Origin: Malacoraja senta
Lineage: Eukaryota
Reading direction: 5' to 3'
NCBI GenBank assembly: GCA_038087875.1
Contig: CM075979.1
Location: forward strand, 45,446,001-45,510,000
Length of the DNA: 64,000 nucleotides
Shown piece after piece: positions 13,210 to 52,200 of this stretch. Under the pieces are notes generated by a model. The model had not been told where the DNA came from, did no database searches, and saw only the letters and a program-made list of their open reading frames with translations. The position numbers and the translations under genes were made by a program. The number at the start of each line of letters is the position of its first letter. Position 1 is the first letter of the stretch.

Positions 13210-13258
13210 ATGAACATTCTGACTCTTTGCAGTGTGGTCTCATTTATTTCAGCATCAG
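13210..13258 (+). CDS. Exon 1, signal peptide [16 protein letters not shown]
   Basis: ATG, hydrophobic core and phase-1 donor G|GTGAAG. It sits in a non-repetitive island and joins in frame to the V exon (S-D-T-L-E). Confidence 0.75.
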
Positions 13259-16200: not shown

Positions 16201-19200
16201 AGAGCAGGGTTCTTGACCCGACAATGAAGGCCCGTTGTGCTGACGGTGTTGCAGGGTCGACCTGGCCAAGTGTAGCCATGATGTTCTCCGCCACTGCTCC
16301 ACCGCTGTAGGCCGCATCCGGTCCACACGCTCCCCATCTTGGAGCGGCACCCAGTCCAACAAAGAGCAAAGAGTAGGAGTGAACGGGTCCTTTTCAGAAT
16401 GGCAGGCAGTGGCGAGTGGAGTGCCGCAAGGCTCGGTGTTGGGGCCGCAACTGTTTACCATATATATTAATGATTTGGAAGAGGGAATTAGGAGCAACAC
16501 TAGCAAGTTTGCGGATGACACAAAGCTGGGTGGCAGTGTGAACTGTGAAGAGGATGTTAGGAGGTTGCAGGGTGACCTGGACAGGTTGACTGAGTGGGCA
16601 GATGCGTGGCAGATGCAGTATAATATAGATAAACGTGAGGTTATCCACTTTGGCGGCAAACACAAGGGGGCAGATTAATTATCTCAATGGGGTTAGGTTA
16701 GGTAAGGGGGAGGTGCAGCGAGACCTGGGCGTCCTTGTCCTTGTACGGTCACTGAAAGTTGGCTTACAGATACAGCAGGCGGTGAAGAAAGCTAATGGAA
16801 TGTTGGCCTTCATAACAAGAGGATTTCAGTATAGGAGTAAAGAGGTTCTTCTGCAGTTGTATAGGGCTCTGGTGAGACCACATCTGGAGTATTGTGTACA
16901 GTTTTGGTCTCCTAATTTGAGGAAGGACATCCTTGTGATTGAGGCAGTGCAGCGTAGGTTCATGAGATTGATCCCTGGGATGGCAGGACTATCATATGAG
17001 AAAAGATTGAAAAGACTAGGCTTGTATTCACTGGAGTTTAGAAGGATGAGGGGATATCTTATAGAAACATATAAAATTATAAAAGGACTGGACAAGCTAG
17101 ATGGCAGGACAAATGTTCCCAATGTTGGGCGAGTCCAGAACCAGGGGCCACAGTCTTAGAATAAAGGGGAGGTCCTTTAAGACAGAGGTGAGAAAATACT
17201 TTTTCACCCAGAGAGTTGTGAATTTATGGAATTCCCTGCCACAGAGGGCAGTGGAGGCCAAATCACTGGATGGATTTAAGAGAGAGTTAAGGGCCTGTCC
17301 CACGGGCATGCGACTCCATGCGGCAAGCGGGACCTAACCGGAAGCGGGGGCCACGCGGGGGCCGCGCGGGGGCCGCACGGGGGCCGCGCGGAGGTCGAGT
17401 GATCCCCGTACAGGGCCGGTCGCACCAGCATGCGGCTGTATGCGGCAAGCGCGACCAAACCGGAAGCGGGGGCCGCGCGGAGGTCAATTGAGTGTCGCGG
17501 GAAGTACGCGACACTCAATTAGTGTGGCGTCAAGACGCTGTGTATGGCGTCGAGACGCTGCGTACGGTGTCGAGGCGCTGCGCACGCCTCGAAACCGTAC
17601 GTATTGCGTCGAAGCGGTGCGTACGGCGTTGAGGCGGGTGTGGGCTGGCAGGCCGTTGCCGCGCGGAATTTTTGAACACGGTCAGTTTTTCGGAGCCCCG
17701 CGCGATGTCAGGACCAGCTCCGCACAAATCCATACGGCTCCCGGCGATCGAAGTGGGACTGGCCCCGCGAGGCCGCACAGCTCAAGCGACCACGTTAGAT
17801 CGCGCTTGCCGCATGGAGTCGCATACCCGTGGGACAGGGCCTTTGGATAGAGCTATAGGGGCTAGTGGAATCAAGGGATATGGGGAGAAGCCAGGCACGG
17901 GTTATTGATAGGGGACGATCAGCCATGATCACAATGAATGGCGGTGCTGGCTTGAAGGGCTGAACGGCCTCCTCCTGTACCTACTTTCTATGTTTCTATG
18001 TTTCTATGTTTCTATGTTTCTATGTTTCTATGTAACCGAGCCCCAGGCTGTTGCAGGGCCTCCAGCGGCCCACTCCTCCATCGAGGCCGTGCACTCCATC
18101 CCGCAGCCCGCATGCTCACCGGCCCTCCTATCAGGGTGGGCTTTTCAGGCGGATTCACGTGGTGTGGGTTCTCGTGTTCCCTGTTCGTGTTCCTGGTCCG
18201 TGGGGTGGGTTCCTGTGTTCCCGATCTGTGGTGTGTTCCCGTGATCCCAGTCCATGTTCCCGTGATCCCAGTCCATGTTCCCATGTTTCCAGTCCGTGGC
18301 ATGTGTTTCCATGTTCCCAGTCCGTGTTCCCGTGTTGCCGGTCCGTGGCATGTGTTTCCGTGTCCCCAGTCCGTGGCATGTGTTTCCGTGTTCCCGGTCC
18401 GTGGCGTGTGTTCCCGTGTTCCCGGTCTGTGGCATGTGTTTCCGTGTTCCCAGTGCATGTTCCCATGTTCCCGGTCCGTGTCATGTGTTTCTGTGTTCCC
18501 AGTCCGTGTCCCCGGTCCATGGCATGTGTTCCCGTGTTCCCGGTCTGTGGCATGTGTTTCCGTGTTCCCAGTGCGTGTTCCCATGTTCCCAGTCCATGGC
18601 GTGTGTTTCCGTGTTCCCCGTCCGTGGCGTGGGTTCACGTGTGGACGCTGACAATGCTTCTCATAACTTTATATACTTTTATCAGGTCATCGGTATATAC
18701 GTCTTTCACAATTAATGTTTTTTATGCTTTTTTTAGATACCTTAGAGCTGGAGATATTTGCAAGTCCACTGATGGTATTTGTAAATGACAATGCGACTCT
18801 GAAATGCATGGTTACTGGGTCTGGAAACATTGACTTAAAAAAGATGGCAGTCAGATGGACCCTTAATGAGAAAACAGAAGTGTTTTCCTTTGAAGGAGGA
18901 ACTAAAGAGCGAAATCGATCTGGTGCCAATATTTCTGAGGCTGAATTACTGAAGGGAAATGCTTCAATTCATCTTCCAAAAGTCCAGATCTCTGACGATG
19001 GAATGTACACATGCACTGTGTTTATCGTTCCTGAAAGTGCCAGTCGCTTTTCAACAATGCACGTGTTAGGTAAGATTAACGATAACGTTCAGGAATATAA
19101 TTCCAAGAAAATGGTTTGGAAGTTTGAAACAAGGATGAACAGGGATTTAGATTCTTAGACCACTGGGATCTGCTTTGGGATAAGGGTGAATTGTACAAAA

Positions 19201-22200: not shown

Positions 22201-25200
22201 TTGCACTAAGCATAATTCCCTTATCATGCATCTGTACACTGTGAATGGCTTGATTGTAATCATGTATTGTCTTTCCACTGACTGGTTAGCACGCAACCAA
22301 AGCATTTGATGTACCTCATCACATGTGACAATAAACTAAAGTGAACTGAAACAGAACTGCCCACAACAGTCTAAATACAGTTGAAACCATGTCCTATGAA
22401 GCTGAATCATGACTTCCTGACTCTTATACTCAATGACCCAACCAATGAATGCAAGCACACCATGTGCCTACTTTATCATATTAATGTCTTCAGATGCTAA
22501 TGGTGCTAACATTCCTAACTCTGATGAAGAGACCCCAGCTTGAAAAAATGACCCTGTTCCATTCCCTGCCAATATTTTGGGACCTGCTTAGTGCTTCCAG
22601 TATTGTCTGCTTTTATTTTCCATCTCCAGCACCTGCAGTCTCTTCCTCTAATATTTAAATGTACATTTTTTAATGCAGCTCGACCAAACGTCAGTATATC
22701 GACACAGTCCATCACAAATGAGAAAGGTTCAGAAGTTTCTCTGACATGCAAAGCCAGTGGATTTTACCCTCGACCGATAAACATCACCTGGGTGAAGATA
22801 ACAGGAAGAAGAAATGTTTCCATGAATAACTATACAACACAAATCACTGCCAATGGTGATCGCACTTTCAATGCTGAGAGTAAACTGAAGATTCACCCGA
22901 CATTGAACGATAATGTTGATCAATACAGATGCGTAGTGAGACATCAAACATTCCTGAATGGTCTCATAATAGAACCTTCTCTCACCGTGCCAGGTGAGTT
23001 GAACACAGTGGGAGAGTCTAGGACCAGAGGCCACAGCCTCAGAATAAAAGGACGCACCTTTAGACAGGAGATGAGGAGGAATTTCTTTAGTCAGATGGTG
23101 GTGAATCTGTGGAATTCATTGCCACAGACGGCTGTGGAGGCCATGTCATTGGGCATTTTTAAGACAAATTGTCAGATTCTTGGTTAGTATGGGTGTTGGG
23201 GTTATGGGAGAAGGTAGGAGATTGGGATTGGGTGGGAAAGATAGATCAGCCATAATTGAAAGATGGAGTAGACTTGATGGGCTGAATGGCCTAATTCTGC
23301 TCCTATCATATGAATTTGAACTTATCTAAGCATTTGGCCCATATCCCTCTAAACGTTTCCTATCCATGTACTGTACAAAAATCGTTTAAATGCTGTTATA
23401 GTACCAGCCCCAACTCCCTCCTCTGGCAGCTGGTTCCATTTACCCACAGCCCTCTGAGTGTGATGTTTCCCCTCAGCTTCCTATTAAATCTTTCCCCACT
23501 CACCTATGTCCCCTGGTTCTTGATTCCCCTTGGCTGGGGGGTAAAAGTATCTGCATCCACCCCATCTATTCCCCTCATTTAAGAATTAAATAATTAGAGG
23601 TGTCAGCCTTTTGTAATGAGCGCTGATGTACATCATCCTTGAATAAAGTGAGGGGTCAGATGTGAAGTGCATCAGGACCCTCAGCTCTGGAGATAACTGC
23701 TTCACTGATGGAGTCAGTGTGTGGCTCAGCGGCAAAATGGATTCAGGGCAATGAGCAGTGTTCCACAGTTGAATCACCACCGGTTCAATGCTTGTCTGGT
23801 TATGTCTGACAAGTCAGGTTCTAGAATATTAATCTAGATACATACAACTTTGCGGATTGCCACATGTCTAGAAACTTGTACATAAAGGACCTCTGGTCAT
23901 TCCCAGAGTCTGGAACAGCACAGAATTGCATCAAGTAGAGTTGCTGCTTCATAGCTCCAGAGACCAGGTTTCAATCCTGACCACGGGTGCCGTCTGTGTG
24001 GAGTTTGCCCATGCTCCCTGTGACCACGTGGGTTTCCTCCAGTTTCCACCAGCATCGCAAGGACATGCAGGATTGTAGGTTAATCGGCCCTCTGTAAATT
24101 GCCGTTAGTAGTGTGGGATAATATAGAACTAGTGTGAACGGGTGATCGATGGTCGGCGTGGTCTTGGTGGGCTTTAGAGTCTGTTCAATCAATTCAATCT
24201 CTCAATTCAATTCAATGCAATTCATCAAATCAAGGATTATTAACACATTCCTGACCATTTAAGTCAATCTATTGCTTCTTTTATTCAAAGTCTGTGCAAT
24301 TTTATATATTTAAAATTTACAACACCCAGAAATCAAATTACGCTTTAATTATAATCTGCATCATGGTGACGATATGTATAATCCTTGGAATCTTAAATGC
24401 TACGGCTGTTTTACACCTGGGAAATAAACACAATAGGTACCATTTATGTACAGAACCTAGAACAGTACAGCACAGGAGCAGGCCCTTCGGCCCACAGTGT
24501 TGAACATGATGCCAAGATAAACTCATGTCCTCTGCCTGTGTGTGGTCCATGTCCCTCCATTCCCTGTATATCCATGTGCCTATTTATAAACCTCCCAAAT
24601 GCCACTATCGTATCTGCATCCACCACACATAGCAGTACATTCTCGGTATCCACTCTCTGTTTAAAAACTTGCCCTGTACATCTCGTTTAAACATTACTCT
24701 TCTCGCCTTAAAACTATGCTCTCCAGATTCTCACTATTACATCCTGGGTAAATATTCTGACTGTCTACCTTATCTATGTCTCTCATAATTCTATATACTT
24801 CCATCAGTTCTCCCCTCCACTTGCGTCATTCCAAAGAAAACAATCCAAATCTGTCCAACCTCTCAGTGTAGCTGATACCCCCTAATCCAAGCAGGCACTC
24901 TGATAACCCTCTTCTGCACCCTTTCCAAAGCCTCCACATCCTTCCTGTTATGGGGTGACCAGAACTACACCAATTCCATAAGGGAATACACCAATCTGGT
25001 AAGTAGAATAAGTTAGTGATACATTCTGTGGAATATTGTACATAAATCAAATTGCTGGAGGAACTCAATGGGTCAGGCAGCATCTGTGGAAGGAATGGAG
25101 AGGTGATGTTCCCGACCATAAACATCGTCTGTTCATTCCCTCCACAGATGCTGCCTGACCCACTGAGTTCCTCCAGCACTTTGTGTTTTGCTCAAGATTC

Positions 25201-28200
25201 CAGCATCTGCAGATTCTAGTGTCTCTGATGAATGTTGTGAATGGCCAAGTATATTTATTATTCACGTTTTCATAGATCTATGCCTGTTTTAACAGAACAT
25301 GGAAAATCTGGGCTGATTATTGGAGGCATCTGTGGCATCGGCATATTTCTCTGTGTTGTGTGCGTAGTATTTTATACCTGGAAGAAGAAATGTAAAGGTA
25401 AACACTTTTCCATCTTATAGCGATCAACAAAAAAAGTGAAAATTCTGACTGTCTACCCTGTCTATGCCTCTCATCATTTTATATACTTCCATCAGATCTC
25501 CCCTCAACCTCTGGCATTTCAGAGAAAGATATATTGTCCAGAAAGCTGGAATTGATCTGTGTATTTTTATACTTTTTAAACTGGCACCTAGTCAGCTTGT
25601 TTCCTGGCTAATTGTCTTGTTTATGTTGTTCAGGACAGGTAAATACAACGGACGGTGAAGACCCAAACCATACACCACTTATCGCCAAGACGGGCTCACA
25701 AACTGCACGAGGTAATTGATTATAGTGATTAATTATAACGAATACATGATTCCTATTCTTCCCACGACACACACAATTAGATGAAGTTTTAAGCCAAGTT
25801 TAGAAACATTAGCACAAAACCACAGGTGCTGTCTGTATGGAGTTTGCACGTTCTCTCTGTGACTGTGCGCGCTTTCTCCATGTTCATAAGTTCATGGGTT
25901 ATAGGTTATAGAACTTGGCCATTCATAATCAAAGAGTCCTACAGTAATACAACTTGGAAACAGGCCCTTCGGCCCACCTTGCCCACACTGGCCAACATGT
26001 CCCAGCTACATTAGTCCCAATGAGGGTGAAAGGCAAGCAATGAATCTGAAAATCTGGCAATGTGCAGGAAAATGGGAAGGTAATGCTTTTACTGAAACAT
26101 CAAGTCAACATTATTTGTCACATACACATACAAGATGTCCTGTGAAATGAGAGTGGCAATGCTTGTGGGATTGTGCAAAACAACAGAAAAGAACAGAACA
26201 GAACCAGTATTTACATTAAAAAAAGTAGATGCAACAGCATTTACGCCCTGGTGAGACCAGAGTTTACAGACCTAATGGCCTGTGGGAAGAAACTCTGTCT
26301 CATCCTCTCTGTTTTCACAGTGTGACAGCGGAGGCGCTTGCCTGACCTCAGCTGCTGGAACAGTCCGTTGCTGGGGTGGTAGGGGTCCTTCATGATGCTG
26401 CTGGCTCTGGATCTGCACCTCCTGGTGTATAGGTCCTGAAGGGGGGGTGTAGGGGGGGGGGGAGTGTAGTTCCCGTGGTGCGTTTGGCAGAACACACTAC
26501 TCTCTGCAGAGCCTTCCTGTCCTGGGCAGAGCTGTTACCAAACCAGATAGAGATGTATCTGGCAGGATGCTTTCTACAGCACCAGAGTAGAAGGAATGAA
26601 GGATCCTCACAAAGACTCTGAATTTCCTCAGCTGCCTGAGGTGGTAAAGGCACTGCCTTGCCTTTCTCACCAGTGTGGCAGTGTGTGTTGTCCATGTCAG
26701 ATCCTCTGTGATGTGGACTCCCAGGTATTTAAAGCTGCTCACCCTATCCACAGTAGTCCCATTAATCCCCAGTGGCGTGTACGTCCTCAGTTGTTGTGCC
26801 CTCCTAAAGTCCACGATCAGCTCCTTAGTTTTTGTGACATTCAAGAGGAAGCTGTTGTCCTGACACCAGAGTGCCAGGTCAGCTACCTCCTCCAGGTAGG
26901 CCTTCTCATCGTTATCGGATTTCAGGCCCACCACCACTGTGTCATCAGCAAACTTGATGATGGAGTTGGAGCTGAACCTGGGCACACAGTCATGTGTGTA
27001 CAGGGAGTACAGTAGGGGGATGAGGACGCAACCCTGGGGGGATCCTGTGTTCAGGGTGAGGGGGTTGGAGGTATGTCTCCCCATCTTGACCACCTGGGGC
27101 CTGGCGGTGAGAAAGTCCAGGACCCAGGCCCACAGGGGAGTGTTCAGCCCCAGTTCCAGCAGTTTATCAGCAAATCTGGTGGGGACTATGGTGTTGAAAG
27201 CTGAACTGAAATCAATGAACAGCATCCTCACATAGCCCCCCTTCTGGTCAAGGTGAGAGAGAGAGTGGTGTGCAGAACCTGGGAGACCACATCATCCGTG
27301 GACGGTTTGCGAACTGCAGCGGATCCATGGTACGAGGGAGGAAAGCGCAGATGTAGTCCTTGATCAGTCTCTCGAAGTATTTCATGACCACTGAGGTGAG
27401 GGCCACTGGTCGGTAGTTATCAAGCAGGCTGGAGATGCATTCTTAGGCACTGGGACAATAGTGGATCACTTGAAGCAGGCAGGGACCACGGACTTGACCA
27501 GGGAGAGGTTGAATATTGTGGTGAACACTGGAGCTAACTGATTAGCTACTTTAGTACTTGCCCAGATATACCATCTGGACCTACAGCTTTCCTCATGTTC
27601 ACATGCATCAGAGCCCTCCTCATGTCGTGCTTGGACACCGAGAATGTGTGCATATCCCCAGCGGTGGAACTCACTCCAGCCGCGTTAGCCAGCGCGTTGA
27701 TGATGTTGTTGTTAGCCGGCGAGCTAGGGGTGATGTTGCCACCTCAAATCGTGCATAGAAAAAGTTCAGGTCATCAGCTAAGGAGGTGCCGGCACTCCCG
27801 GTTGAGGGGGGGCTACTCTGGTCATTTGTTATAGACCGTAGCCCCTGCAACAGGCGTCTGGTGTCACGCTGCTCCATCTCTGACTCCATCCTGTCCCTGT
27901 ACCTCCTTTTTGCGTCCTTCACCGCCCTTCACAGTCTATAGGACTCTGCCTTGTAGTCATCCATGTTGCCGGATGCCAGGCCAGAGTTGTAAGCAGCGGT
28001 GCGAGCATCCAAAGCAACGTGAATGGACCTTTCCACCCAGGGTTGTTGGTTAGGAAAGATGCTAACGCTCACCGTGGGGATGATGTTGTCGACTAGTGAT
28101 GCTATGAAGTCTGTGACAGCTTCCGCAAACTCACTGACGTCTCTTGAACTTGATTGGAACATATTCCAGTCAACGTCACTCAGTGCATCCTGTAGCATGG

Positions 28201-31200
28201 CCTCTAAATGGTCAGACCACCGCTTTACATCCTTCGTCACTGCCGCTTCCCGTACTATCCGTTGTTTATACTCCGGCACCAGGAAAATGGCAGCATGGTC
28301 AGATTTTCCAAAAGGAGGGAGAGAAACGGCTTTGTATCCTTTCTTGAACGGTGTGTAACAGTGGTCCATAGTTCTTTCCCCCCTGGTGACACACGTGATG
28401 AGTTGGCAGAAGTAAGGTATAATATTTTTGAGATTCGCCCTATGAAACCCCCCAGCCACCACCATAGCCGCGTCAGGATGCTTGTTCTGATGCCGACATA
28501 ACACATCGATGTCGGACCGATAGTGCCGCGTCAGTGTCTGCATGTGGTGGTATGTAGACGGCTGCTATGATGACTCAGCTGAACTCCCGGGGAAGGTAGA
28601 ATGGACGGCATGAGATCGTCAGATTTTCCAGGTCCGACGAGCAGGAACGGGAAAGCATCTTAATATCCTTATGGTTGCACCAGTTGTTGTTGGTCATGAA
28701 GCAAATCCCTCCACCCTTGGATTTTCCGGACTCTATCCGCACGAAAAACAGAAGGACGATCACTTGATCCAAGTGATGACTACTATGAAACATAGATCAT
28801 AGAACTGTACAGCACAGGAACAGGCCCTTCAGCCCACAATGTCTGTGCTGAACATGATGCCAAGAACATCAATTAGCTAACTGCACATAACCCATATCCC
28901 TCCATTCCCAGCATATCCGTGTCTATCCAAAAGTCTGTTAAATGCCACTATCATATCAGCCTCCACCACCACCCCTGGCCGTGCGTTCTAGTCAACCACC
29001 ATCCACTGTTTATAAAACCTACCCCACACATCTTCAACATTTGCCCTTCTCATCTTAAAACTGTGCCCTCTAGTATATGATTTTTCCATCCTGGGAAAAA
29101 GCTGCTGATAGTCTATCCACGATTAATTTTATTTACTTCTATCAGGAAAATTCGCAAATATGCCAAATTTACTGTTTGGATCCCCACACATTTATGCCTG
29201 GTACATCTGATCTGTCTCACCCGAAACATCACCTTTTTGGTCACGTCTTAAAAATACTCAATCAGATTTGTGAGACACAATCTCCCACATACAAAACCAT
29301 GCTGACTATCCCAAATCAGCCCTTGTCTGTCTAAATGTCTATATATCCTATCCCTCAGAATACTATCTGGTAACTTTCCAACTACAGATGTTAAGCTCAC
29401 TGCCCTATAGATCCCAGCATTTTCCCTGCAGCCCTTCTTGAATAGAGGCACCCTCCAGTCTTCCGGCACCTCTCCTGTATTTAAAGAAGACTCGTAAATT
29501 TCAACCAGGGCTCCCACAATTTCCTCTCTGGTTTCCCACAATGTCCGCGGATATATCTGATCAGGCCCTGGAGATTTGTCTACCTACATACACTACACAT
29601 TTGGCCCTTCAAGTCTACTCCGCCATTCAATCATGCTGATCTATCTTTCCCTCTCAACCCCAATCACTTGCTTTCTCCCCATAAACCTTGACATCGTTTT
29701 CTATGGTTTTCCTCACACATCCCTAAGACGTGTGGGTTTGTCAGTTAATTGGCCCTCTGGAAATTGCCCCTAGTGTGGAGGGAGTCGATGAGAAAGTGGG
29801 ATAACACAAAACTACTGGGTGATCGGTGGTCATTGTGGACTCAGTGGGTTACGTGCTGGCTTCTGTAAATGCCCCCAGTGTTTAGGATAGGACTAGTGTA
29901 TGGAGTGGTTACTGGTGGACATGGACTCTGTGGGTCGAAGAACTGTTCCCGTGCTGTATCTCTAAACTAAACTAAGTTTAAATGAATGAAGTTTGTAAAT
30001 TATATGCAAGGAATAATGCGTTGGACAATAATGGAGTAAAATGGAACATTACCTTTACATTGCATTTAATTTTGTTTGTGTCTATCTTTCAGCTCCTGCA
30101 ATTAGTGATATGAAGAATCAGTATGAAGTTGTACATGGTGAAACTGCTGATGTGAGCTGGGATGTGACCATGACTACTCTGGTGCCAATGGATATTGTTA
30201 TATCACTGAAGAGGACAGAGCAGAAAACAATTACATTATTTCACTGGCAGTTGTCAGCAGAACAATTGCAGGAACCAAAAAGGGTGACACAACCTCTAAC
30301 TAAACTGAATTCATGCAATCAAGATAAATCCTTCTCTGCAGATCAGCCTGAATTACAAACTACCCATCCGGGTCTTTCACACATTCACTGCTGTATTAAG
30401 GTGCAGCCTAATTTATCCACGGACGATGCCGCTCAGATCAATATTGAACACAAATCAAACACTCCAGACGCCACTTGGTCTGAAATGCATACTACAGTCC
30501 TCAAAGTTACCTCAGGTAATATCTAATAATGCCTTGTACATTCTCATCTAAACCATTGATATAGATAACAAACAGCAATGGGAGGCACACCACCAGACAG
30601 GGTCTCTAGTCCAAAAAAGGTCCCAACCCGAAAGATTACCTATCCATGTTTTCCACAGATGCTACTTGACCCACTTACTCCAACACTTTGTGTCCATGTT
30701 TTTGTAAACAAGCATCTACAGTTCCTTGTATCTGTCACTGTCACCCTCTGCTTCTGATGGGCTGAATGGCCTAATTCTGCTCCAAAAACGTATGAACTTC
30801 AGGCCAATTCTGCATCCTACACTAATCCAATTCTCTATTCCCCTTCATATACTTATACAAACTCGTTGCATTCTCCTTAATCTTCTCAGCCAAAGTGATC
30901 TCATGCCTTCTCTTCGTCGTTCCAATTTCCTTCCGAAGTAACTCCTACATCCCGATGCTCCTCCAGGGATTCACGTGATCCCAGCTCTTCTTTCTGGTCC
31001 ATTCCTCCTTTTCTCCAGCCGGAACCACAATATCTCTTGTATTCCAGGCTTCCCCAGTCCGTGCTGACCAGTGATCCCCATACATAGCACTATCCCACAC
31101 ATCAGGGACAATTTGTACCAAAGCCAATTAACCTACAAACCTGTACATCTATGGAGTGCGGGAGCAAACCAGAGCAGCCGGAGAAATCCCCACGCGGTCA

Positions 31201-34200
31201 CGGTGAGAACGTCCAAACTCGATACAGACAGCGTCCATAGTCAGAATCGATCCCGGGTCTCTGGCGCTGTAAGGCAACAACTCATCCACTGCTCCATCGT
31301 GCCATTCCTAATTTGCTTTTGGTAAAATTGTAAATAGTCATTAATGTGTAGGATAGTGTTAGTGTACGGGGTGATCACTGGTCAGCGCGGACTCGGTGGG
31401 CTGAAGGGCTGTGTCTCTAAAGTCTAAAGACAAATGAGGTTCATAATGAAGAAGAGTTGAAGGTATTTTCTGCAGGAGTGAGATACAGATCCTTCGGCAG
31501 ATGAAGACTTCACTGTGGGGAAGAATAATAAAGCTCCTCGAGGTGTGATCCAGCTTCTCACATACCTTGTCTCAGGCTGTGTTGCCATTATCACATCAGA
31601 GAGACTTTCTTTTGTTTAAATGCAGTGCCCAAGTCAGATGCTGCCACGGGGAGTTGTGATGAAGGTGAACAACAGATAGAGAGGCAGGATACCCAAAATG
31701 CAGGAGCAAGTGAAGGTAAGGCTTTTCTCAAAGCATCCAGAGTATTGTTGTCCTTTCAGTGGCATTTGATGTCCAGCCATTGTCTGCAGACTGTACATGA
31801 TTTATATTTAGTTACTCTCTGCAAATATTATATACAATATTCAGGTCAATGCTCAAATATGTGGAATTTTCTGTTTGGGACTACATGCATTCAAGTTCAG
31901 TTGTTGTCACCTTGCTGTGTTTTAATACAGCGCCTGATTCAGATGTCGCAACAAGAAGTATTGATGAAGGTAAAATGGAAAAAGAGAATCTGGAAAATCA
32001 AAGTGCAGGAAAACAGGAAGGTAATGCTTTTGCTGAAATATAGAACATAGAACAGTGCAGCACAGGAACTTCAGCCCACAATATCTGTGCTGGACATGAT
32101 GCCAAGACCATTACTTATCTACCTGCACATAACCCATATCCCTCTATTCCCAGCTTATCCGTGCATATCCAAAAGCCTCATGAATGCCATTATCGTATCT
32201 GCCTCCACCACCACCCCTGGCAGCGCGTTCCAGTCACCCACCACCCTCTGAGTATAAAACCTGCCCCACACATAGTCATAGTCACAGAGTCATAGTGTGG
32301 AACACTAGAGGGTGTGAGCTACAGGGAGAGGTTGAGTACTCTGGGACTCCATTCCTTGGTGTGCAGGAGAATGATGCGTGTTCTTGCAGAGGTGTATAGG
32401 ATCATGAGAGGAATATATCGGGTAGATGCACAGAGTCTCTTGCCCAGAATAGGTGAATCGAGAACCAGAGGACATAGGTTTAAGGTGAAAGGGAAAAGAT
32501 CTGAGGGATACATTTTTTACACAGAGGGTGGTGGGTGTATGGAACTAGCTTCCAGAGAAGGTAGTTAAGACAGGGACTATCAAAAAATTTAAGAAACTGT
32601 TTGACAGGTACATGGACAGGTTTGGAGGGATATTGTAACAATATCCATGTAATTTATGCGTAAGAGCTGTACTTATTCTTGCACATGCTCAGTAAATCAG
32701 TCAGTGACCTTTGACTTGGAAATAAATCATTTCTGTTTTTGATCCCAACACGAGTGTGTGTGCAGCCATCTTTCTCTGTATATTATGTGCTAGTTTAATT
32801 ATTTTGTAAGCAGACATATGTATGAAAATTATGCAGTGATAACAGAACTGGATAAGAAAGAGAAACCGTATCAAAAAGCAGTATTCCTGCATTCCTTTGG
32901 ACCGGAAGGACTGCAAATCTTCAATACCCTGACATTCGAAACGGTAGCAGATGAGACGGATGTGAAAGTCATCTTCGACAAGATGTCCATCATCATCATA
33001 GGAGAGATGAATGAAACGTATGAAAGATTCATTTTCAATAAACGAGACCAGAAACCAGGGGAAAGCATTGAATCGTATGTTGTAGAGCTGAAGGAGTTTG
33101 CTAAAACATGCAACTTCTGTGAGTGCCTGAGAGAAAGCCTCATTCGAGATCACATCGTCATTGGTATTGAGGACCAGTCAACTAGGAAGACACTCCTTCA
33201 GAAGAGGAATCTGACACTGCAAGGGATTGTGGACATATGTAGATCCTTGGAGGTAACAGCGGCAAGAATGCAGGTCATCGGCGAAGAGCCGACAATACAC
33301 AAGTTGGAACGATTCAAGGCAGTGTAAACTACTTGGCAAGATTCCTGCCAATGTTGTTGGACACATTCGAGCCATTGAGGAGATTGACCCACAAGGAAGC
33401 AGAGTGGGAATGGTCATCAGAACATGACATGGCAATGTCAAAGATCAAGGTGCTGTTGACAACGGCACCTATCCTGGCGTACTACACACCAGACGAACAG
33501 CTGACCATACAATGTGATGCAAGCAAGGCAGGTCTAGGTGCAACACTTATGCAGAAAGGACACTCCACTTACTTTGGTAAATATATATGCCCCTAACTTT
33601 GATAACCCCCACTTTTTCAATAAAATCTTCAATATAATTGCAGAGTCAAACTATCAAAATGTTATAATAGGCGGAGACTTTAACTGTGTTTTAGATCCGT
33701 ACTTAGATAAATCAAGTCAAAAACAGAGAGGGAATATGAAATCGAAAACTGGGGAACTCCTCAATACCTACATAAATAACACTAATATAGCAGATGTTTG
33801 GAGAATTGTGAATCCAACTGGCAGGGAATATTCGTTTTACTCAATGGTACATAAGACATACTCACGTATAGACTACTTTCTGCTGGATACAAAATTAATT
33901 CCCCAAACATCTAATGCAATATATCATACAAATTCAATTTCAGACCATTCTCCACTAACTTTCTTTTTAAAACTGGAAGGATTGTCTAAGAATAATTCAT
34001 TCTGGAGATTTAACTCTCAAATTCTAAAAGATCCACAAGCGAGTATATATTTAAAAGAACAAATGGAGGTCTTTTTTCAAACAAATGATACTTCAGATAT
34101 ATCGCCTACTTTACTTTGGGAATCTTTTAAAGCATACATTAGGGGTATTATAATTTCATATCAAGCTTTTCAAAATAAAAAGAATAAGAATGAACAAAGA

Positions 34201-37200: not shown

Positions 37201-40200
37201 TTTTAATTTCGCTCTTATAGGGTCTTCGTCCTTTTTTGTTGTTACATTTTCTACACTTTTCTACACTTGCACTTTTTCCTTCACTTTCTTCTCTCTTTCA
37301 ATCTTTTCTTTCTCTAGTGTAAAAAAATAAATAAAGGGAGTACATTAATTGTAAGATGATATAAATGATGAGTATTAATGTATGTGGTTGTAATGTAATG
37401 TACTTCTAATAAATAAAAATTAAAAAAAAAAAAAAAAAAAAAAGAAAGGACAACCACTGTCCTATGTGAGTCGAGCATTGACACCAACCGAGCAGCGATA
37501 TGCTCGGATTGAGAAGGAGGCACTAGCAATAGTGTTTGCCCTCGAGCGCTTTCATCAGTACACCTACGGACAGTGAGTGATCGTGGAGAGTGACCACAAG
37601 TCGTTGGATGTCATCGTTAAAAAGCCTCTGCATAGAGCACCAAGACGTCTCCAGGGCATGATGATGACGATGCTACACTATGACATCGAGATCAAATGGG
37701 TAAAGGGAGCATACCTCCCTGACACCACAGGATCAACCAGATTCACTGATGGCAACGTAGTTGAGTCCTTGAGCATGGGAGAGGACAAGGTCAAACGTAT
37801 CCAAGCCCACACCAGGGAAGACGAAACGCTACAAACAGTTAAGATAGTAATCCAAAATGGATGGCCAGATCACAAGGCAGACGTCCCAGAGGCAGCACAA
37901 CCGTACTTCAATGTCAGAGACGGGTTGAGTGTGCAAGACGGCCTATTATTCAGAGGAGAGAGAGTTGTAATCCTTGTCACTCTACGTAGAGATATGAAGG
38001 AGACACACACTCTTTCGTTTCCTGCATAAAACTTTATAAATTTTGGAGTGATATTTTTGAAATATTTACAAAATTATTCAAGATAAAAATGGAACCTAAT
38101 ACTGAAATGATTATATTTGGAGTAATGGAAGATGGGAATAAATTGAACTCATCTCAAATTTATTTTAAAATTATGGTTTAATAATAGCAAAAAAACTACT
38201 TAAATTCTGGAAAATACCAATACCTATGCTTAAAATGTGGATTTCAAGCATGTTGGACACCGCACATCTTGAGGAAATGCGATTCCTCCTAATAGATAAA
38301 CCAGACCAATTCTTAACGAGTTGGTCTCCATTTGTCGTCTTTTTGGAATCATATGGTGCAACACAATTGTAGAAGCTAACTGTTCCAGGACGGTGAGGGA
38401 TGGTCAAGATTATAAATAATGATCTCCTTACTTTTCTTTTTTTATTTGCTACTCTCTTATTTCTATTTTCTTTTCTTCAATTTGCTTCTTTCACTATTTT
38501 TTTTCTTTTTCACACACTATATACCTCACGTTTTTCTATCTTTTATTATCTACTTTCTTTTACTTATTCTTCTTTATCATAATAAAACAAATAAGAAGCT
38601 GTACATAAAATGTTCGACAGGTACATGGACAGGTTTGGAGGGATATTGTGACAATATCCATGTAATTTTTGCGTATGAGCTGTACTCATTCTCGCACATG
38701 CTCAGTAAGTCAGTCAGAGTGACCTTTGACTTGGAAATAAATCATTCCTGTTTTTGATCCAGGGAAACCACCAGACGCGGGGAAGACTGTGAAACATTTG
38801 CAACCTCAGCTGACACAAAAAATACCAACACAACATGCATCACCAGAAAAAGATGCAACTCGTGAAACTCATAACAAAGAGAAATCGAAACAAAAACAAA
38901 GTGACACTAGAGAAGAAACTAGAAGTGATGCACAGAATGTACAGACTGAAAACAAGACACTTTTGAAAGAAACACCATCACAAAGACATGGGCAGGAAGA
39001 GCTGTCAGACCACCGGAGAGGTACGGCGAGTATGTCACGAAGTAATGTGTTTTGTTGCGATGTACCTACATGCTTATGAGTAGAAAGCATGTGAACATTA
39101 TTTTATGTTATTGAAATGTCACAAGTGTGACTATGATTGAAATTGTGAAATAAGATGGAACAGTTGTTTTATTTTGTTAAGTTAAACCATATTACTATGG
39201 TGTAATATTATGAAAAGTGTTTAAGTTTACTTTGTTTTGGATCGTTGGAAATGTAATCCCAAAATGTCAAAAAGGAAAGGATGTGACAATATCCATGTAA
39301 TTTATGCGTATGAGCTGTACTCATTCTCGCACATGCTCAGTAAATCAGTCAGTGACCTTTGACTTGGAAATAAATCATTCCTGTTTTTGATCACAACACG
39401 AGTGTGTGTGCAGCCATCTTTCTCTGTATATTATGTGCTAGTTTACTTATTTTGTAAGCAGACATATATCAAAACAGATATGGACCAAATCTGGGCAACT
39501 GGGACTAGCGTAGCTGGGACATGTTGGTCGACATGGGCAAGTTGGGCCGAAGGGTCTGTTTATACGCTGTATCACTCTATGACTCTATGACTCTAAGTGC
39601 ACTTGCCGAATTGTTTCAAATTATATTCCCTAGGTTGACAGAGAGACATTTTGTCCAGTGTGAATATCCCAGAAATGTTCATTCTGAAGTCTATTAAACA
39701 TTTGGCTTATAGCAGGGATGGGATCAGAGGAATTTTAATGTATAGAGAGATGTATTTAACTAAATAACAGTTGTACGTAACTTTTGCAGCAGCAACATGC
39801 AGATCTTTAGTCAGGTTAAGGCTTCTCTTTTGTGCTCTTAAATTATCGGTGGGAAACTACAAAAGTTCGAGACCTGTGATCCAGCTTCTCGGAATGTGTT
39901 GGGATACCTTATCTCAGGCAATGTTGGCATCATTACATGTGAGACTCCTTCTTGTGTTTTAATACAGCGCCGGATTCAGATGTCACCACAGGAAGTCCCG
40001 ATGAGGATGAAAATCAAGCAAGGAAACTGGAAAATCCAAGTGCAGTAAAACAGGAAGGTAATGTTTTTGCTGAAACATAGAACATAGGACAGTACAGCAC
40101 AGGAACAGGCCCTTCAACCCACAATGTCTGTGCTGAACATGATGCCAAGACCATCACTTATCTACCTGCACATAACCCATATCCCTATATTCCCAGCATA

Positions 40201-49200: not shown

Positions 49201-52200
49201 GAGATGCAAACCTGACCCACCGAGTTACTCCAGCACTTTGTGCCCATGTTTATGTAAACCAGCATCTACGGTTCATTGTGTTTTCCACCACCTGCTTCAT
49301 CCATCATTGAATGGCAGTGAATACTGATGGGCTGAATGGCCTAATTCTGCTCCAAGAACGTACGAACTTCAGGTCAATTCTGCATCCTATACTAATCCAA
49401 TTCTCTATTCCCCTTCATATACTTATACAAACTCGTTGCATTCTCCTTAATCTTCTCAGCCAAAGTGATCTCATGCCTTCTCTTCGTCGTTCCAATTTCC
49501 TTCTGAAGTAACTCCGACATCCCGATGCTCCTCCAGGGATTCACGTGATCCCAGCTCTTCTTCTTGGCCCATGCCTCTTTTTCTCCAGCCAGAACCACAA
49601 TATCTCTTGTATTCCAGGCTTCCCCAGTCCATGCCGACCAGTGATCCCCATACATAGCACCATCCCACACATCAGGGACAAAGCCAATTGACCAACAAAC
49701 CTGTATGTCTATGGAGTGCGGGAGCAAACCGGAGCAACCGGAGAAAACCCACGCAGTCACGGGGAGAACGTACAAACTCCATACAGACAGCGTCCATAGT
49801 CAGAATCGATCCCGGGTCACTGGGACTGTAAGGCAACAACTCATCCACTGCTCCAATGTGCCATTCCTAATTTGCTTTTGGTAAAATTGTAAATAGTCAT
49901 TAATGTGTAGGATAGTGTTAGTGTACAGTGTGATCACTGGTCGGCGCGGACTCGGTGGGCCGAAGGGCTGTGTCTCTAAAGTCAAAAGACAAATGAGGTT
50001 CATAATGAAGAAGTGTTGAAGGTATTTTATGCAGGAGTGAGATACAGATCCTTCGGCAGATGAAGCCTTCACTGTGGGGAATAATAATAAAGTTCCTTGA
50101 GGTGTGATCCATCTTCTCACATACCTTGTCTCTGGTTATGTTGCCATTATCACATTTGAGAGACTTTATTTTATTTAAATGCAGTGCCCAAGTCAGATGC
50201 TGCCATGGGGAGTTGTGTTGAAGGTGAACAACAGACAGAGAGGCAGGATACCCAAAATGCAGGAGCAAGTGAAGGTAAGGCATTTCTCAAAGCATCCAGA
50301 GTATCGTTGCCCTTTCAGTGACATTTGATGTCCAACCATTGTCTCCAGACTGTACATGATTCATATTTAGTTAATTCCTGCTAATATTATATACAATATT
50401 CAGGTCAATGCTCAAATATGTGGAATTTTATGTTTGGGACTATATGCATTCAAGTTCAGTTGTTGTCACCGTGCTGTGTTTTAATACAGCGCCGGATTCA
50501 GATGTCGCTACAAGAATTCTTGATGAAGGTAAAATGGAAAAAGAGAATCTGGGAAATCAAAGTGCAGGAAAACAGGAAGGTAATGCTTTTGCTGAAATAT
50601 TGAATATAAAATAGTACAGCACAGGAACAGGCCCTTCTGCCCACAATATCTGTGCTAAACATGATGCCAAGACCTTCAATTCACTGCCTGCACATAACCC
50701 ATATCCCTCCATTCCCAGCATAACCTGCCCAGCACATAGTCATAGTCACAGAGTATTAGATAGAGTGTGGAAACAGGTCCTTCGGCTCAACTTGCCCACA
50801 CGGCCAACATGTCCCAGCTACACTAGTCGCACCTGCCAGCGCTTGGTCCATATCCCCCCAAACCTGTCCTATCCATGTACCTGTCTTACTGTTTCTCAAA
50901 TGATGGGACAGTCAAAACCTCAACTACCTCCTCTGATGGCTTGTTCCACACACCCACCACCCTTTGTGTGAAAAAGTTTCCCCTCCGATTCCTCTTAAAT
51001 CTTTTCCCCTTCACCTTGAACCTATGTCCTCTGGTCCTCGATTCCCCTACTCTGGGCAAGAGACTGTGTGCATCTACCTATTCCTCTCATGAGGCTGGGA
51101 ATAGAGTCCCAGCCTACTCAACCTCTCCCTATAGCTCACACCCTCTAGTCCCAGCAACATGCTCATAAAGCTTTTCTGAACCCTTTCAAGCTTGACAATA
51201 TCTTTCCTATAACATGGTGCCCAGAACTGAACACGGGATTATTATGACGATTTAATTCAATTTATAAATCTTTCTATTCTTCAATTCTACAGCTGCGCAA
51301 ATACTTAGCAGAGAAAATAATTTTCAAATGTTTTAAATTTTCAAGCATGTTGCTGTGAACATGATTTAAAACGTGTGAGCAGGCAGATGGAAACATTATT
51401 TCTTGTTATACAGCCAAGTTCAGATATCAAGCATGCTCTTTCAATATTTGGAATGGTGTCCATCCTTGCCAAGAGAAGTAAAGAATTATTTTGTAGACAC
51501 AAGAGACTACAGATGTTCGAATGTTGAGCAAAAAGTAAAGTGCTGGAGCAACTCAGCGGGTCAGGCAACATCTGTAGTGGGAATAGACCAATGACGTTTC
51601 AGATCAGGACCCATCTTCAGACTCAAGTCTGAAACGTCGTCTGTCCCTTCCCTCCATAGATCCTCCCTCTGAGCTCCTCCACCACTTTGCTTTCTGCTGA
51701 AGAATTATTTTTCATAATGGACTTAACATTACCAACAAACTGTAACTTCTGTCCAGGAATTGGAACAGGAAGGACCATTATGTTCAGCACAGACATTGTG
51801 GACTGAAGGACCTGTTTCCACCATGCATCATTTTATGACTCTATGACCCTACATAGATCAGTACAGTACAAGAACAGGCCCTTCAGTCCACAATGTCCGT
51901 GCTGAACATGATGCCAAGACCGGCTCTTATCTATAATCCATCTCCCTCCATTCCCTGCATATCCACGTGCCTGTCAAAAAGTCTCTTAAACACCACTATC
52001 ATATCCGCCTCCACCACCACCCCTGGCAGTGCGTTCCAGGCACTCAACACCCTCTGAGCAAAAAACGTTGCCATGCACATCTGCTTTAAACTTTACCCCT
52101 CTCACCCTAAACCGATGCCCTCTAATATTTGACATTTTCATCCTGGGGTAAAATGTTCTGACTGTCTACCCTGTCTATGCCTCTCATCATTTTATATACT

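What the first reader, a model, noticed from the sequence alone, without database searches (positions are those of the whole stretch)
30093..30515. Intracellular, cysteine-less Ig-like domain
Seen: a 141-codon unique open exon downstream of the TM exon. It keeps C1-like spacing ([10 protein letters not shown] for [10 protein letters not shown]; [18 protein letters not shown] for [19 protein letters not shown]; ends LKVTS), but both disulfide Cys positions are replaced and ~35 residues are inserted. Established: the cytosol is reducing and cytoplasmic Ig domains lack the disulfide. Inference: an ectodomain exon recruited into the tail. I recall, without being able to verify it, that some amphibian B7-H6-like genes have cytoplasmic Ig domains, so novelty must be checked.
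Basis: partly seen in the sequence, partly recalled or inferred. Interest (0 to 1): 0.85.

Follow-up and report, generated by a model that had tools for sequence, protein, structure and literature searches.

The report
Ig-like domain behind the membrane anchor
This skate exon encodes an antibody-type (Ig) domain placed after the membrane anchor of a B7-H6-like immune-ligand gene, so it should sit inside the cell. That is odd, but the same design is present, unstudied, in database gene models from sharks, rays, chimaeras and probably frogs.

Summary
The exon is real: 423 nt at 30093-30515, AG/GT borders, phase 1-1, open, and single-copy in the window. It lies downstream of the leader, V, C1, TM and short cytoplasmic exons of a B7-H6/B7-H3-like gene.

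- **Fold.** AlphaFold2 gives a confident all-beta model (pLDDT 87.6). Every structural match is an Ig domain (Z about 12).
- **Ancestry.** Profile comparison ties it to the gene family's own C1-set domains (92.8%, E 3.9e-7), not to the V domains (2.8%). Both canonical cysteines are replaced and about 36 residues are inserted.
- **Correction.** It is not cysteine-less. It has three Cys, and one of them is kept in 28 of 31 family copies.
- **Distribution.** All 13 strong matches (E at or below 1e-10) are gene models from sharks, rays, skates and chimaera. The full-length ones read SP-V-C1-TM followed by 1-8 copies.
- **Location.** No second TM, chance-level glycosylation sequons and odd cysteine counts fit a cytosolic position.

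Caveats:
- No splice junction was recovered for this species.
- One horn-shark isoform skips the TM exon.
- dN/dS against a sister skate is 0.94.

The scan had already noted this design at three other loci of this genome. It is a further member of an uncharacterised but publicly recorded design.

The parts
13210..13258 (+). Leader (signal peptide) exon, [16 protein letters not shown], phase-1 GT donor
   Evidence: Scan for ATG + hydrophobic peptide + phase-1 donor. The peptide matches the N-termini of homologues, e.g. MNILTFGSVVSLISMS in P0003.
18737..19069 (+). Ig V exon, phase 1-1, B7-type
   Evidence: tblastn with P0001/P0002/P0008; borders. Best solved relatives are CD276 (8e-19) and B7-H6 (4e-11).
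22679..22993 (+). Ig C1 exon, phase 1-1, with canonical Cys pair and FYP..I..W motif
   Evidence: PDB sequence hits are C1-set domains, including B7-H6.
25296..25397 (+). Transmembrane exon ([22 protein letters not shown]) followed by WKKKCK, phase 1-1
   Evidence: Homologues have one TM at the same place.
25634..25711 (+). Short juxtamembrane cytoplasmic exon, phase 1-1
   Evidence: 67% identical to P0002 residues 266-292.
30093..30515 (+). The finding: tail Ig-like exon, C1-derived, 140 aa plus split codons, phase 1-1
   Evidence: Splice sites and frame are kept in Rhinoraja L001 34423-34851.
31626..31715 (+). First 30-aa acidic repeat exon ([16 protein letters not shown]...), phase 1-1. It follows the Ig exon in the sister-skate model P0014.
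   Evidence: P0014 reads ...LKVTS|[16 protein letters not shown].
31931..32020 (+). Second acidic repeat exon (APDSDV...), phase 1-1
39968..40057 (+). Third acidic repeat exon, phase 1-1. Further copies lie at 50185-50274, 50490-50579, 53562-53651, 54211-54300 and 58692-58781; whether those belong to the same transcript is not established.

Best explanation
The exon encodes a roughly 140-residue Ig-like beta-sandwich descended from a C1-set domain. It has lost the canonical B-F disulfide (W and I in place of the two Cys). It has also gained about 36 residues after strand C that form extra C'/C''-type strands, so the predicted shape resembles a V domain.

It belongs to the tail of a type I membrane protein of the B7 family (B7-H6/B7-H3-like): signal peptide, V, C1, one TM helix, a basic stop-transfer, a short linker, this domain, then 30-residue acidic repeats. 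With that topology the domain faces the cytosol.

The module arose before chimaeras split from sharks and rays. It has been amplified to as many as 8 tandem copies in some species.

Most likely function (inferred, not shown): a disulfide-independent protein-protein interaction or scaffolding module on the inner face of an NK/T-cell ligand. It would control the ligand's sorting, clustering or signalling, much as the B30.2 domain does in the related butyrophilins.

What is shown: exon anatomy, homology, predicted fold, gene order, and the architecture in relatives' gene models. What is inferred: splicing in this species, cytosolic location and function. This particular copy may be under relaxed constraint.
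For: Exon and gene context:
- Exon borders and phase.
- Gene order leader-V-C1-TM-cyt-Ig-acidic exons.

Relatives:
- phmmer against 1.84 billion representatives gave 13 matches at E 1e-10 or better, all chondrichthyan RefSeq or Ensembl models. The full-length ones read SP-V-C1-TM-(domain)n; several of the 13 are partial models that hold only the tail.
- One chimaera model is named NCR3LG1 (B7-H6)-like.
- The chimaera ectodomain's best solved relative is human B7-H6, at 3e-29.

Fold and ancestry:
- AF2 with a 31-copy alignment gives pLDDT 87.6 and pTM 0.81, all-beta.
- Foldseek PDB and AFDB hits are all Ig domains, TM-score by query up to 0.67.
- VIA-align gives Z about 12 over roughly 115 residues.
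- hhalign to the family's own C1 domains gives 92.8%, E 3.9e-7; to the V domains, 2.8%.
- Pfam C1-set hits occur in 10/31 copies. One chimaera copy scores 22.0 bits against a cut-off of 21.

Cytosolic signs:
- One TM only in every homologue.
- Sequon density is 0.60 per 100 aa, about chance, with no conserved sequon column. The V and C1 domains have 1.8-2.3 per 100 aa with conserved columns.
- Cysteine counts are often odd and the positions are not paired.
- Splice sites are kept and both indels are in frame against the Rhinoraja copy.
Against: - No RNA junction was found. Only three short, low-depth contigs lie inside the exon, from 'RNA?' runs of another species. No RNA run held the V exon.
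- All architectural support comes from predicted gene models.
- Heterodontus isoform X3 (P0024) lacks the TM exon, which would make the array secreted.
- dN/dS against the Rhinoraja copy is 0.94, and exon identity (90.8%) is only modestly above the introns (83.5% and 88.7%).
- This copy carries derived changes at positions that are invariant in the 11 other elasmobranch copies and unchanged in Rhinoraja (K41T, K46I, G60E).
- No partner, motif or function is known.
Confidence: 0.65

Rival explanations
1. The domain works mainly outside the cell. Because every exon is phase 1-1, skipping the TM exon gives a secreted V-C1-(domain)n protein. The TM-containing form would then be a minor or precursor isoform.
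For: Predicted isoform X3 of the Heterodontus gene (P0024) joins ...TDPVE directly to GKTIPKE... and lacks the 31 residues of the TM exon. C99 is nearly invariant, and up to 5-6 Cys occur in some copies.
Against: - The canonical Ig disulfide is lost in every one of 31 copies, across the chimaera-elasmobranch split.
- Cys counts are mostly odd and the positions shift.
- Sequons are at chance level, unlike in the ectodomains.
- The flanking acidic D/E/Q-rich repeats are typical of cytosolic disordered tails.
- Among the models that reach the TM region, only P0024 lacks the TM segment; the TM-less records are partial, tail-only models.
Confidence: 0.15
2. In this particular gene copy the exon is a drifting relic. 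The family's fold is old and functional elsewhere, but this copy evolves neutrally within a fast-turnover tandem gene cluster and may be on the way to loss.
For: - dN/dS is 0.94 (8.5 synonymous and 29.5 non-synonymous differences) against Rhinoraja.
- Differences seen in related species' DNA contigs show no third-position excess (8/11/8 by codon position, counted by hand).
- 14 of the 20 polarisable differences are derived in the window's lineage. They include three positions invariant in the 11 other elasmobranch copies and unchanged in Rhinoraja, and a codon lost from the basic KRK loop.
- An earlier scan note describes neighbouring copies as truncated or damaged.
Against: - The frame is open, both indels are in frame and the splice sites are intact.
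- All five family-invariant residues and the hydrophobic core are kept.
- Changes are fewer in conserved columns: 3 of 34 against 23 of 103.
- The leader, V, C1, TM and cyt exons of the same gene are all intact.
- High dN/dS is common in immune-ligand genes.
Confidence: 0.15
3. It is not part of this gene: either a chance open frame, or an exon of a separate downstream gene wrongly fused by gene predictors.
For: No junction-spanning RNA was obtained here. Some partial database models start inside or just before the domain, with a pseudo-signal peptide translated from the intron's pyrimidine tract (P0011, P0013, P0014).
Against: - Database matches reach E-values of 1e-200 to 1e-16.
- The borders are conserved.
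- Gnomon and Ensembl models both place it right after the TM. In chimaera only about 8 residues separate the two.
- No leader or promoter-proximal exon for a separate gene was seen between 25.7 and 30.1 kb. That stretch holds a reverse-transcriptase-bearing retroelement on the minus strand.
Confidence: 0.05

Closest known systems
Human B7-H6 (NCR3LG1; PDB 3PV6, 4ZSO, 6YJP)
   Same: Type I membrane protein with a V + C1 ectodomain. The chimaera family member's ectodomain matches it best (3e-29). The window's V and C1 exons match it at about 4e-11 and 4e-12. One chimaera model that carries the tail domain is named NCR3LG1-like.
   Different: To my knowledge (not tested here), the human tail has no Ig domain; it is described as gag-like with short signalling motifs. 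The window's V exon scores higher with CD276/B7-H3. NKp30 binding is untested.
Butyrophilins (BTN3A1/BTN2A1): B7-related V-C-TM proteins with an intracellular B30.2 domain
   Same: A B7-type ectodomain coupled through one TM to a folded beta-rich intracellular domain. It is the best functional analogy for an inside-out sensor or adaptor. BTN V domains are among the structural matches.
   Different: B30.2/PRYSPRY is a different fold with no sequence relation. Ligand sensing by the skate domain is pure conjecture.
Pfam C1-set (PF07654): constant domains of Ig, TCR, MHC, beta2-microglobulin, tapasin, SIRP
   Same: The motif pattern L-x-[C/W]-x-V-x-G-F-x-P...I, then GTF-x-V...P, then x-V-x-H-x-x-L is kept, especially in chimaera copies. 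hhalign gives 92.8% and 10/31 copies have weak Pfam hits.
   Different: The window exon gets no Pfam hit. The canonical disulfide and the C-strand Trp are lost. A 36-residue insertion gives V-like strand topology. It sits after the TM, whereas known C1-set domains are extracellular (my knowledge).
Cytosolic Ig-like domains of titin, obscurin, MyBP-C, filamin and lamin
   Same: A disulfide-free Ig sandwich working in a reducing compartment as a structural or interaction module (my knowledge).
   Different: Those are I-set or other classes in soluble or cytoskeletal proteins. They are not C1-derived and do not sit in the tail of an IgSF surface ligand. No sequence relation was found.
Xenopus laevis XP model P0034 (V-C1-TM-Ig-Ig, 480 aa), and AFDB cluster hit A0A1L8GI71
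   Same: The same design: Ig-like domains after the TM. PF00047 scores 21.9 bits and C1-set 17.8 bits in residues 250-480. The second tail domain also lacks both canonical Cys. A0A1L8GI71 is by far the best AFDB match of the skate model: E 3e-8, 17% identity, 147 aligned residues.
   Different: hhalign of the chondrichthyan profile against the P0034 tail gives only 3%, so orthology of the tail domains is unproven. The P0034 ectodomain is not specifically B7-H6-like. The sequence and organism of A0A1L8GI71 could not be read here.

Membership tests
Immunoglobulin fold (IgSF domain) | Two-sheet Greek-key beta-sandwich of about 100-140 residues | tested here: met
   AF2 pLDDT 87.6, pTM 0.81, 11 strands. 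All top Foldseek hits are Ig domains. VIA-align Z about 12, rmsd 2.4-3.0 A over 104-124 residues in the 50 matches shown.
C1-set Ig domain (PF07654) | Significant sequence-profile match to C1-set | tested here: inconclusive
   The window exon has no Pfam hit at E up to 10. 10/31 family copies hit C1-set, best E 1.5e-4. Chimaera copy P0027:581-716 scores 22.0 bits against a cut-off of 21. hhalign to the family's own C1 domains gives 92.8%, E 3.9e-7.
C1-set Ig domain (PF07654) | Conserved B-strand and F-strand cysteines forming the intradomain disulfide | tested here: not met
   The B-strand position is W in 27/31 copies and C in 4 chimaera copies. The F-strand position is V/I/L in all. In the window these are W22 and I117.
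C1-set Ig domain (PF07654) | Seven-strand constant-type topology without C'/C'' strands | tested here: not met
   An insertion of about 36 residues after strand C forms extra strands (E46-53, E65-67). The best structural matches are V-type domains: Nav beta4, MPZ, TCR V.
B7-H6 (NCR3LG1) family | V + C1 ectodomain most similar to B7-H6 | tested here: inconclusive
   For chimaera member P0030, B7-H6 is the best solved relative (3e-29). For the window's V exon, CD276 comes first (8e-19) and B7-H6 second (4e-11). The C1 exon matches generic C1-set domains, including B7-H6.
B7-H6 (NCR3LG1) family | Binds NKp30 and co-varies in copy number with NKp30 genes | not testable with these tools
NKp30 genes were not looked for in this window.
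Cytoplasmic domain of a type I membrane protein | N-terminal signal peptide, a single TM with a basic C-terminal flank, and the domain encoded 3' of the TM with no further TM | tested here: met
   Leader exon. TM followed by WKKKCK. One TM in each homologue that reaches that region; the other records are TM-less partial models or the TM-skipped isoform P0024. Sequons at chance level in the tail.
Cytoplasmic domain of a type I membrane protein | Exon shown to be spliced to the TM-containing mRNA, and the domain shown to lie in the cytosol | tested here: inconclusive
   Only three intra-exon contigs were found in RNA? runs of another species, with no junctions. The architecture is known only from predicted models. 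A TM-skipped isoform is predicted in Heterodontus.

The most novel reading that the evidence does not exclude
Cartilaginous fishes, and possibly early jawed vertebrates in general, equipped B7-H6-type NK/T-cell ligands with cytosolic C1-derived Ig modules. These would act as intracellular sensors or adaptors, letting the cell's internal state gate the display or conformation of the ectodomain. That would be an 'inside-out' system parallel to butyrophilin B30.2 signalling, and the first working C1-set-derived domain in the cytosol.
Probability: 0.12. Interest if true: 0.85.

Novelty: new member of a known kind. Interest (0 to 1): 0.5.

Why it matters
C1-set Ig domains are a hallmark of adaptive-immunity molecules and, as far as I know, always work outside the cell. 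Here a C1-derived domain has been kept for several hundred million years behind the membrane anchor of B7-H6-like ligands, and amplified to as many as eight copies.

That poses a concrete and untouched question: what does an Ig array do on the cytosolic face of an NK-cell ligand?

It also gives a natural example of an Ig sandwich that appears to have evolved to fold without its disulfide. The canonical pair is replaced by W and V/I.

For annotation, it shows that Pfam misses this subfamily, and that gene predictors produce spurious 'signal peptides' from the upstream intron.

This exon adds one more copy, possibly a drifting one, to a design already present in public gene models. The same design had already been seen at three other loci of this genome by this scan.

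Tried and rejected
- **Pfam on the exon alone.** No hit.
- **Word-indexed protein search with the exon.** Nothing, because the length window excludes full-length relatives. The same tool with chimaera queries returned only chimaera proteins plus one Xenopus protein.
- **RNA evidence.** Two run searches and two read layings gave no junction. The 5.6-kb stretch was swamped by repeats. The narrow stretch showed only three intra-exon contigs from another species, and the '?' runs proved to be DNA because their contigs cross the exon borders.
- **PDB sequence search with the family profile.** Only chance hits at E about 1.
- **Disulfide or zinc-site idea for the conserved cysteines.** Rejected as unsupported. 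Cysteine positions and counts vary and are often odd.
- **V-domain origin.** Rejected: hhalign gives 2.8%, despite the V-like predicted topology.
- **Orthology of the Xenopus P0034 tail domains with this family.** Not supported: 3%.
- **Literature.** Seven full-text searches found no description of post-TM Ig domains in B7-H6-like genes. The two most relevant papers (Flajnik et al. 2012, PMC3709836; Ohta & Flajnik 2015, PMC4594805) are not held. Prior description there cannot be excluded.
Full report
**What is at the coordinates**

The sequence shows ...tctatctttcag|CTCCTGCA... at 30093 and ...GTTACCTCAG|gtaatatc after 30515. The exon is 423 nt. The open frame reads through it with one base of a split codon at the 5' end and one at the 3' end, so it is phase 1-1.

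tblastn of related proteins onto the window gives a coherent plus-strand gene:
- leader exon 13210-13258
- V exon 18737-19069
- C1 exon 22679-22993
- TM exon 25296-25397 ([22 protein letters not shown] followed by WKKKCK)
- a 78-nt cytoplasmic exon 25634-25711
- the exon in question
- 90-nt exons encoding 30-residue acidic repeats, from 31626 onwards

All of these exons are phase 1-1 with AG/GT borders. The exon is the only copy of its kind in the window. The intron between 25.7 and 30.1 kb holds a reverse-transcriptase-bearing retroelement on the minus strand.

**Is it more than chance?**

Yes. phmmer of the 140-residue translation against 1.84 billion representative proteins returned 21 matches, 13 of them with E-values between 1e-200 and 1e-16. 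All 13 strong ones are gene models from cartilaginous fishes:
- sharks: Heterodontus, Scyliorhinus (two species), Stegostoma, Heptranchias
- rays: Mobula (two species), Hemitrygon
- skates: Rhinoraja, Leucoraja
- the chimaera Callorhinchus

The full-length models share one architecture: signal peptide, V, C1, one TM helix, then 1 to 8 copies of this domain. In elasmobranchs the copies are separated by acidic low-complexity repeats. In the chimaera they are joined head to tail.

The Leucoraja model continues ...LKVTS|[16 protein letters not shown], which is exactly the window's 30515>31626 junction. In the chimaera only about eight residues separate the TM from the first copy. One chimaera model carrying the domain is named 'natural cytotoxicity triggering receptor 3 ligand 1-like', that is, B7-H6-like.

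The chimaera ectodomain's best solved relative is human B7-H6, at 3e-29. The window's own V exon matches CD276/B7-H3 (8e-19) and B7-H6 (4e-11).

**Fold**

I aligned 31 domain copies (A1) and ran AlphaFold2 with the window's exon as target. The result was mean pLDDT 87.6 and pTM 0.81, all-beta with two short helical turns.
- Foldseek against the PDB and against Swiss-Prot models returned only Ig domains: Nav beta-4, myelin P0, TCR V, antibody V and a butyrophilin-complex chain. TM-score by the query reached 0.67.
- VIA-align gave Z about 12 over roughly 115 residues at 2.4-3.0 A.
- Protein-language-model neighbours are V-set clusters.

The Ig sandwich is therefore well supported. Its strand count is V-like.

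**Ancestry**

Although the shape is V-like, the sequence is C1-like. The family consensus reads PKITxI..P.EI.HGE...L.W.VTGFTP....IV.SLKRK...LFHW...SFTAEVP...GTF.V.C.I...PD.S.DDGAEL.V.V.H..L.

Four chimaera copies still have Cys in L-x-C-x-V-T-G-F-T-P, and chimaera copies keep the H-E-A-L motif.

hhalign gave these results:
- Against an alignment of the same proteins' C1 domains: 92.8% probability, E 3.9e-7, 97 columns spanning the whole domain.
- Against their V domains: 2.8%.

Pfam finds nothing in the window's exon. It does give weak C1-set hits in 10 of 31 copies, and one chimaera copy passes the gathering score at 22.0 against 21 bits.

In the alignment the B-strand Cys corresponds to W22. 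The F-strand Cys corresponds to V/I in the family profile, which is I117 in this exon by the A1 register.

'Cysteine-less' is not correct. The exon has C74, C99 and C100. C99, on the predicted E strand, is present in 28/31 copies.

**Inside or outside the cell?**

For the cytosol:
- Homologues that reach the TM region have exactly one TM-like segment after the signal peptide, and none has one downstream of the domain.
- The TM is followed by a basic cluster.
- N-glycosylation sequons occur in the tail domain at 0.60 per 100 aa (26 observed, 19 expected by shuffling), and no column is conserved. The V and C1 domains have 1.8 and 2.3 per 100 aa, about twice chance, with conserved sequon columns.
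- The canonical disulfide is absent from all copies. Cysteine counts are often odd and their positions shift.

Against, or unresolved:
- All of this rests on predicted gene models.
- The predicted Heterodontus isoform X3 skips the TM exon, which the uniform phase 1-1 structure allows. It would be a secreted V-C1-(domain)7 protein.
- I obtained no junction-level RNA evidence. No RNA run holds the V exon.
- Two small 'RNA?' runs of a different species contain three low-depth contigs at about 97% identity. These lie wholly inside the exon (30166-30283, 30290-30364, 30338-30472) and do not touch the unique intron flanks. That weakly suggests transcription but says nothing about splicing.
- The other runs are DNA, because their contigs cross the exon borders.

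**Selection**

The Rhinoraja locus (L001) is collinear with the window from the TM exon onwards. Against its full copy (L001 34423-34851):
- The exon is 90.8% identical, while the flanking introns are 83.5% and 88.7% identical.
- There are two in-frame indels, and the AG/GT sites are conserved.
- dN/dS is 0.94, from 8.5 synonymous and 29.5 non-synonymous differences.
- Replacements are fewer in family-conserved columns (3 of 34 against 23 of 103), but not significantly so; the only test run, a permutation test on column entropy, gave p = 0.16.
- 14 of the 20 polarisable replacements are derived in the window's lineage. They include K41T, K46I and G60E, at positions invariant in the 11 other elasmobranch copies and unchanged in Rhinoraja, and a codon lost from the basic KRK loop.

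Over deep time the fold is clearly maintained: five invariant and nine nearly invariant columns across chimaera, sharks and rays. This copy, however, may be under relaxed or diversifying selection.

By contrast, the ectodomain exons of the two skate genes are only 41% (V) and 33% (C1) identical in protein, while the tail domain is 78% identical.

**How it most likely works**

My committed reading is a disulfide-independent, C1-derived Ig module on the cytosolic side of a B7-H6-like ligand. It would act as an interaction or scaffold unit, possibly an inside-out regulator by analogy with butyrophilin B30.2. It is strung together with acidic disordered spacers.

The identity, fold, ancestry and gene position are shown. 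The location is inferred from topology rules and composition. The function is conjecture. The only invariant charged residue is R40, in the basic C-C' loop next to the invariant F49 and W51 of the LFHW motif. That is a candidate binding surface, but I could not map it because model coordinates are not exposed.

**Comparison with what is known, and novelty**

The design is not unique to this exon, or even to cartilaginous fishes.
- This scan had already noted B7-H6-like genes with post-TM Ig arrays at three other loci of the same genome (s1-140100, s1-140066, s1-140065). One follow-up stated that the design runs from chimaeras to turtles and is in the public record under the B7H6 name.
- I could confirm part of that claim. 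A chimaera model with the tail domain is named NCR3LG1-like.
- A Xenopus laevis V-C1-TM protein has two Ig-like domains after its TM (PF00047 at 21.9 bits, C1-set at 17.8 bits). The second of these also lacks both canonical cysteines.
- The best AlphaFold-DB cluster match of the skate model, by four orders of magnitude, is A0A1L8GI71: E 3e-8, 17% identity, a 147-residue aligned stretch. I believe from the accession series that it is Xenopus laevis, but I could not read the entry.
- I could not show orthology between the chondrichthyan tail domain and the Xenopus P0034 tail (hhalign 3%). I could not test the turtle claim.
- Seven full-text searches found no paper describing such domains. The two most likely sources are not held.

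I therefore rate this as a new member of a known, publicly recorded but functionally uncharacterised kind. The phenomenon itself is interesting. This copy adds little beyond a clean structural and evolutionary characterisation of the elasmobranch subfamily: the 36-residue insertion, the V-like shape, W in place of the disulfide, and the fact that Pfam does not detect it.

Noticed in passing
window 18737-19069 and 22679-22993 versus 25296-32020; L001: Between this gene and the Rhinoraja gene, the V and C1 exons are only 41% and 33% identical in protein and do not align at megablast level. The TM, cytoplasmic, Ig-tail and acidic exons with their introns are collinear at 84-91% nucleotide identity. 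The cause could be diversifying selection or exchange of ectodomain exons among paralogues.
   Followed up: partly
window 26497-28543, minus strand: Long ORFs with reverse-transcriptase motifs (e.g. ...[10 protein letters not shown]...) lie in the intron between the cytoplasmic exon and the Ig exon. This is a retroelement insertion, and it swamped the first read-laying.
   Followed up: no
window 50313-53672 and 54061-57078: A tandem segmental duplication, each unit carrying acidic repeat exons. Each unit also has a degenerate copy of the 78-nt cytoplasmic exon (52340-52417, 56169-56246) whose donor region differs from the original. It is unclear whether they belong to the same transcript.
   Followed up: partly
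window 30041-30092 (ORF 30041-30526): Translating the intron's pyrimidine tract upstream of the exon gives [17 protein letters not shown], which looks like a signal peptide. Some database models of the chimaera genes start in just this way (MFTSGLSFCFVV|PPKIT). These are probably artefactual N-termini that could mislead topology calls.
   Followed up: partly
P0024 (Heterodontus francisci XP_067902349.1): This predicted isoform lacks the 31-residue TM exon while keeping the signal peptide, V, C1 and seven tail domains. It would be a secreted form, if real.
   Followed up: partly
L001 28443-28850 and 34423-34851: The Rhinoraja gene has two copies of the Ig-tail exon. The alignment of the first copy starts at window position 30113, so its first 20 nt and the upstream intron have no match. 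The RefSeq model uses only the last roughly 31 codons of that copy (P0002 residues 290-324) before the full second copy.
   Followed up: partly
window 30283: One contig of an RNA? run (X2) matches 30166-30283 and then continues with 29 unrelated letters. The break falls just before GTGACA inside the exon. It could be a cryptic donor, a paralogue or an assembly chimera.
   Followed up: no
hits P0016-P0021: The weakest database matches (E 1e-7 to 1e-3) are mostly bacterial or metagenomic repeat proteins, where named (MBG domain, VCBS repeat, gliding-motility-associated), plus an insect hypothetical protein. This is probably generic beta-sandwich similarity, not homology.
   Followed up: no
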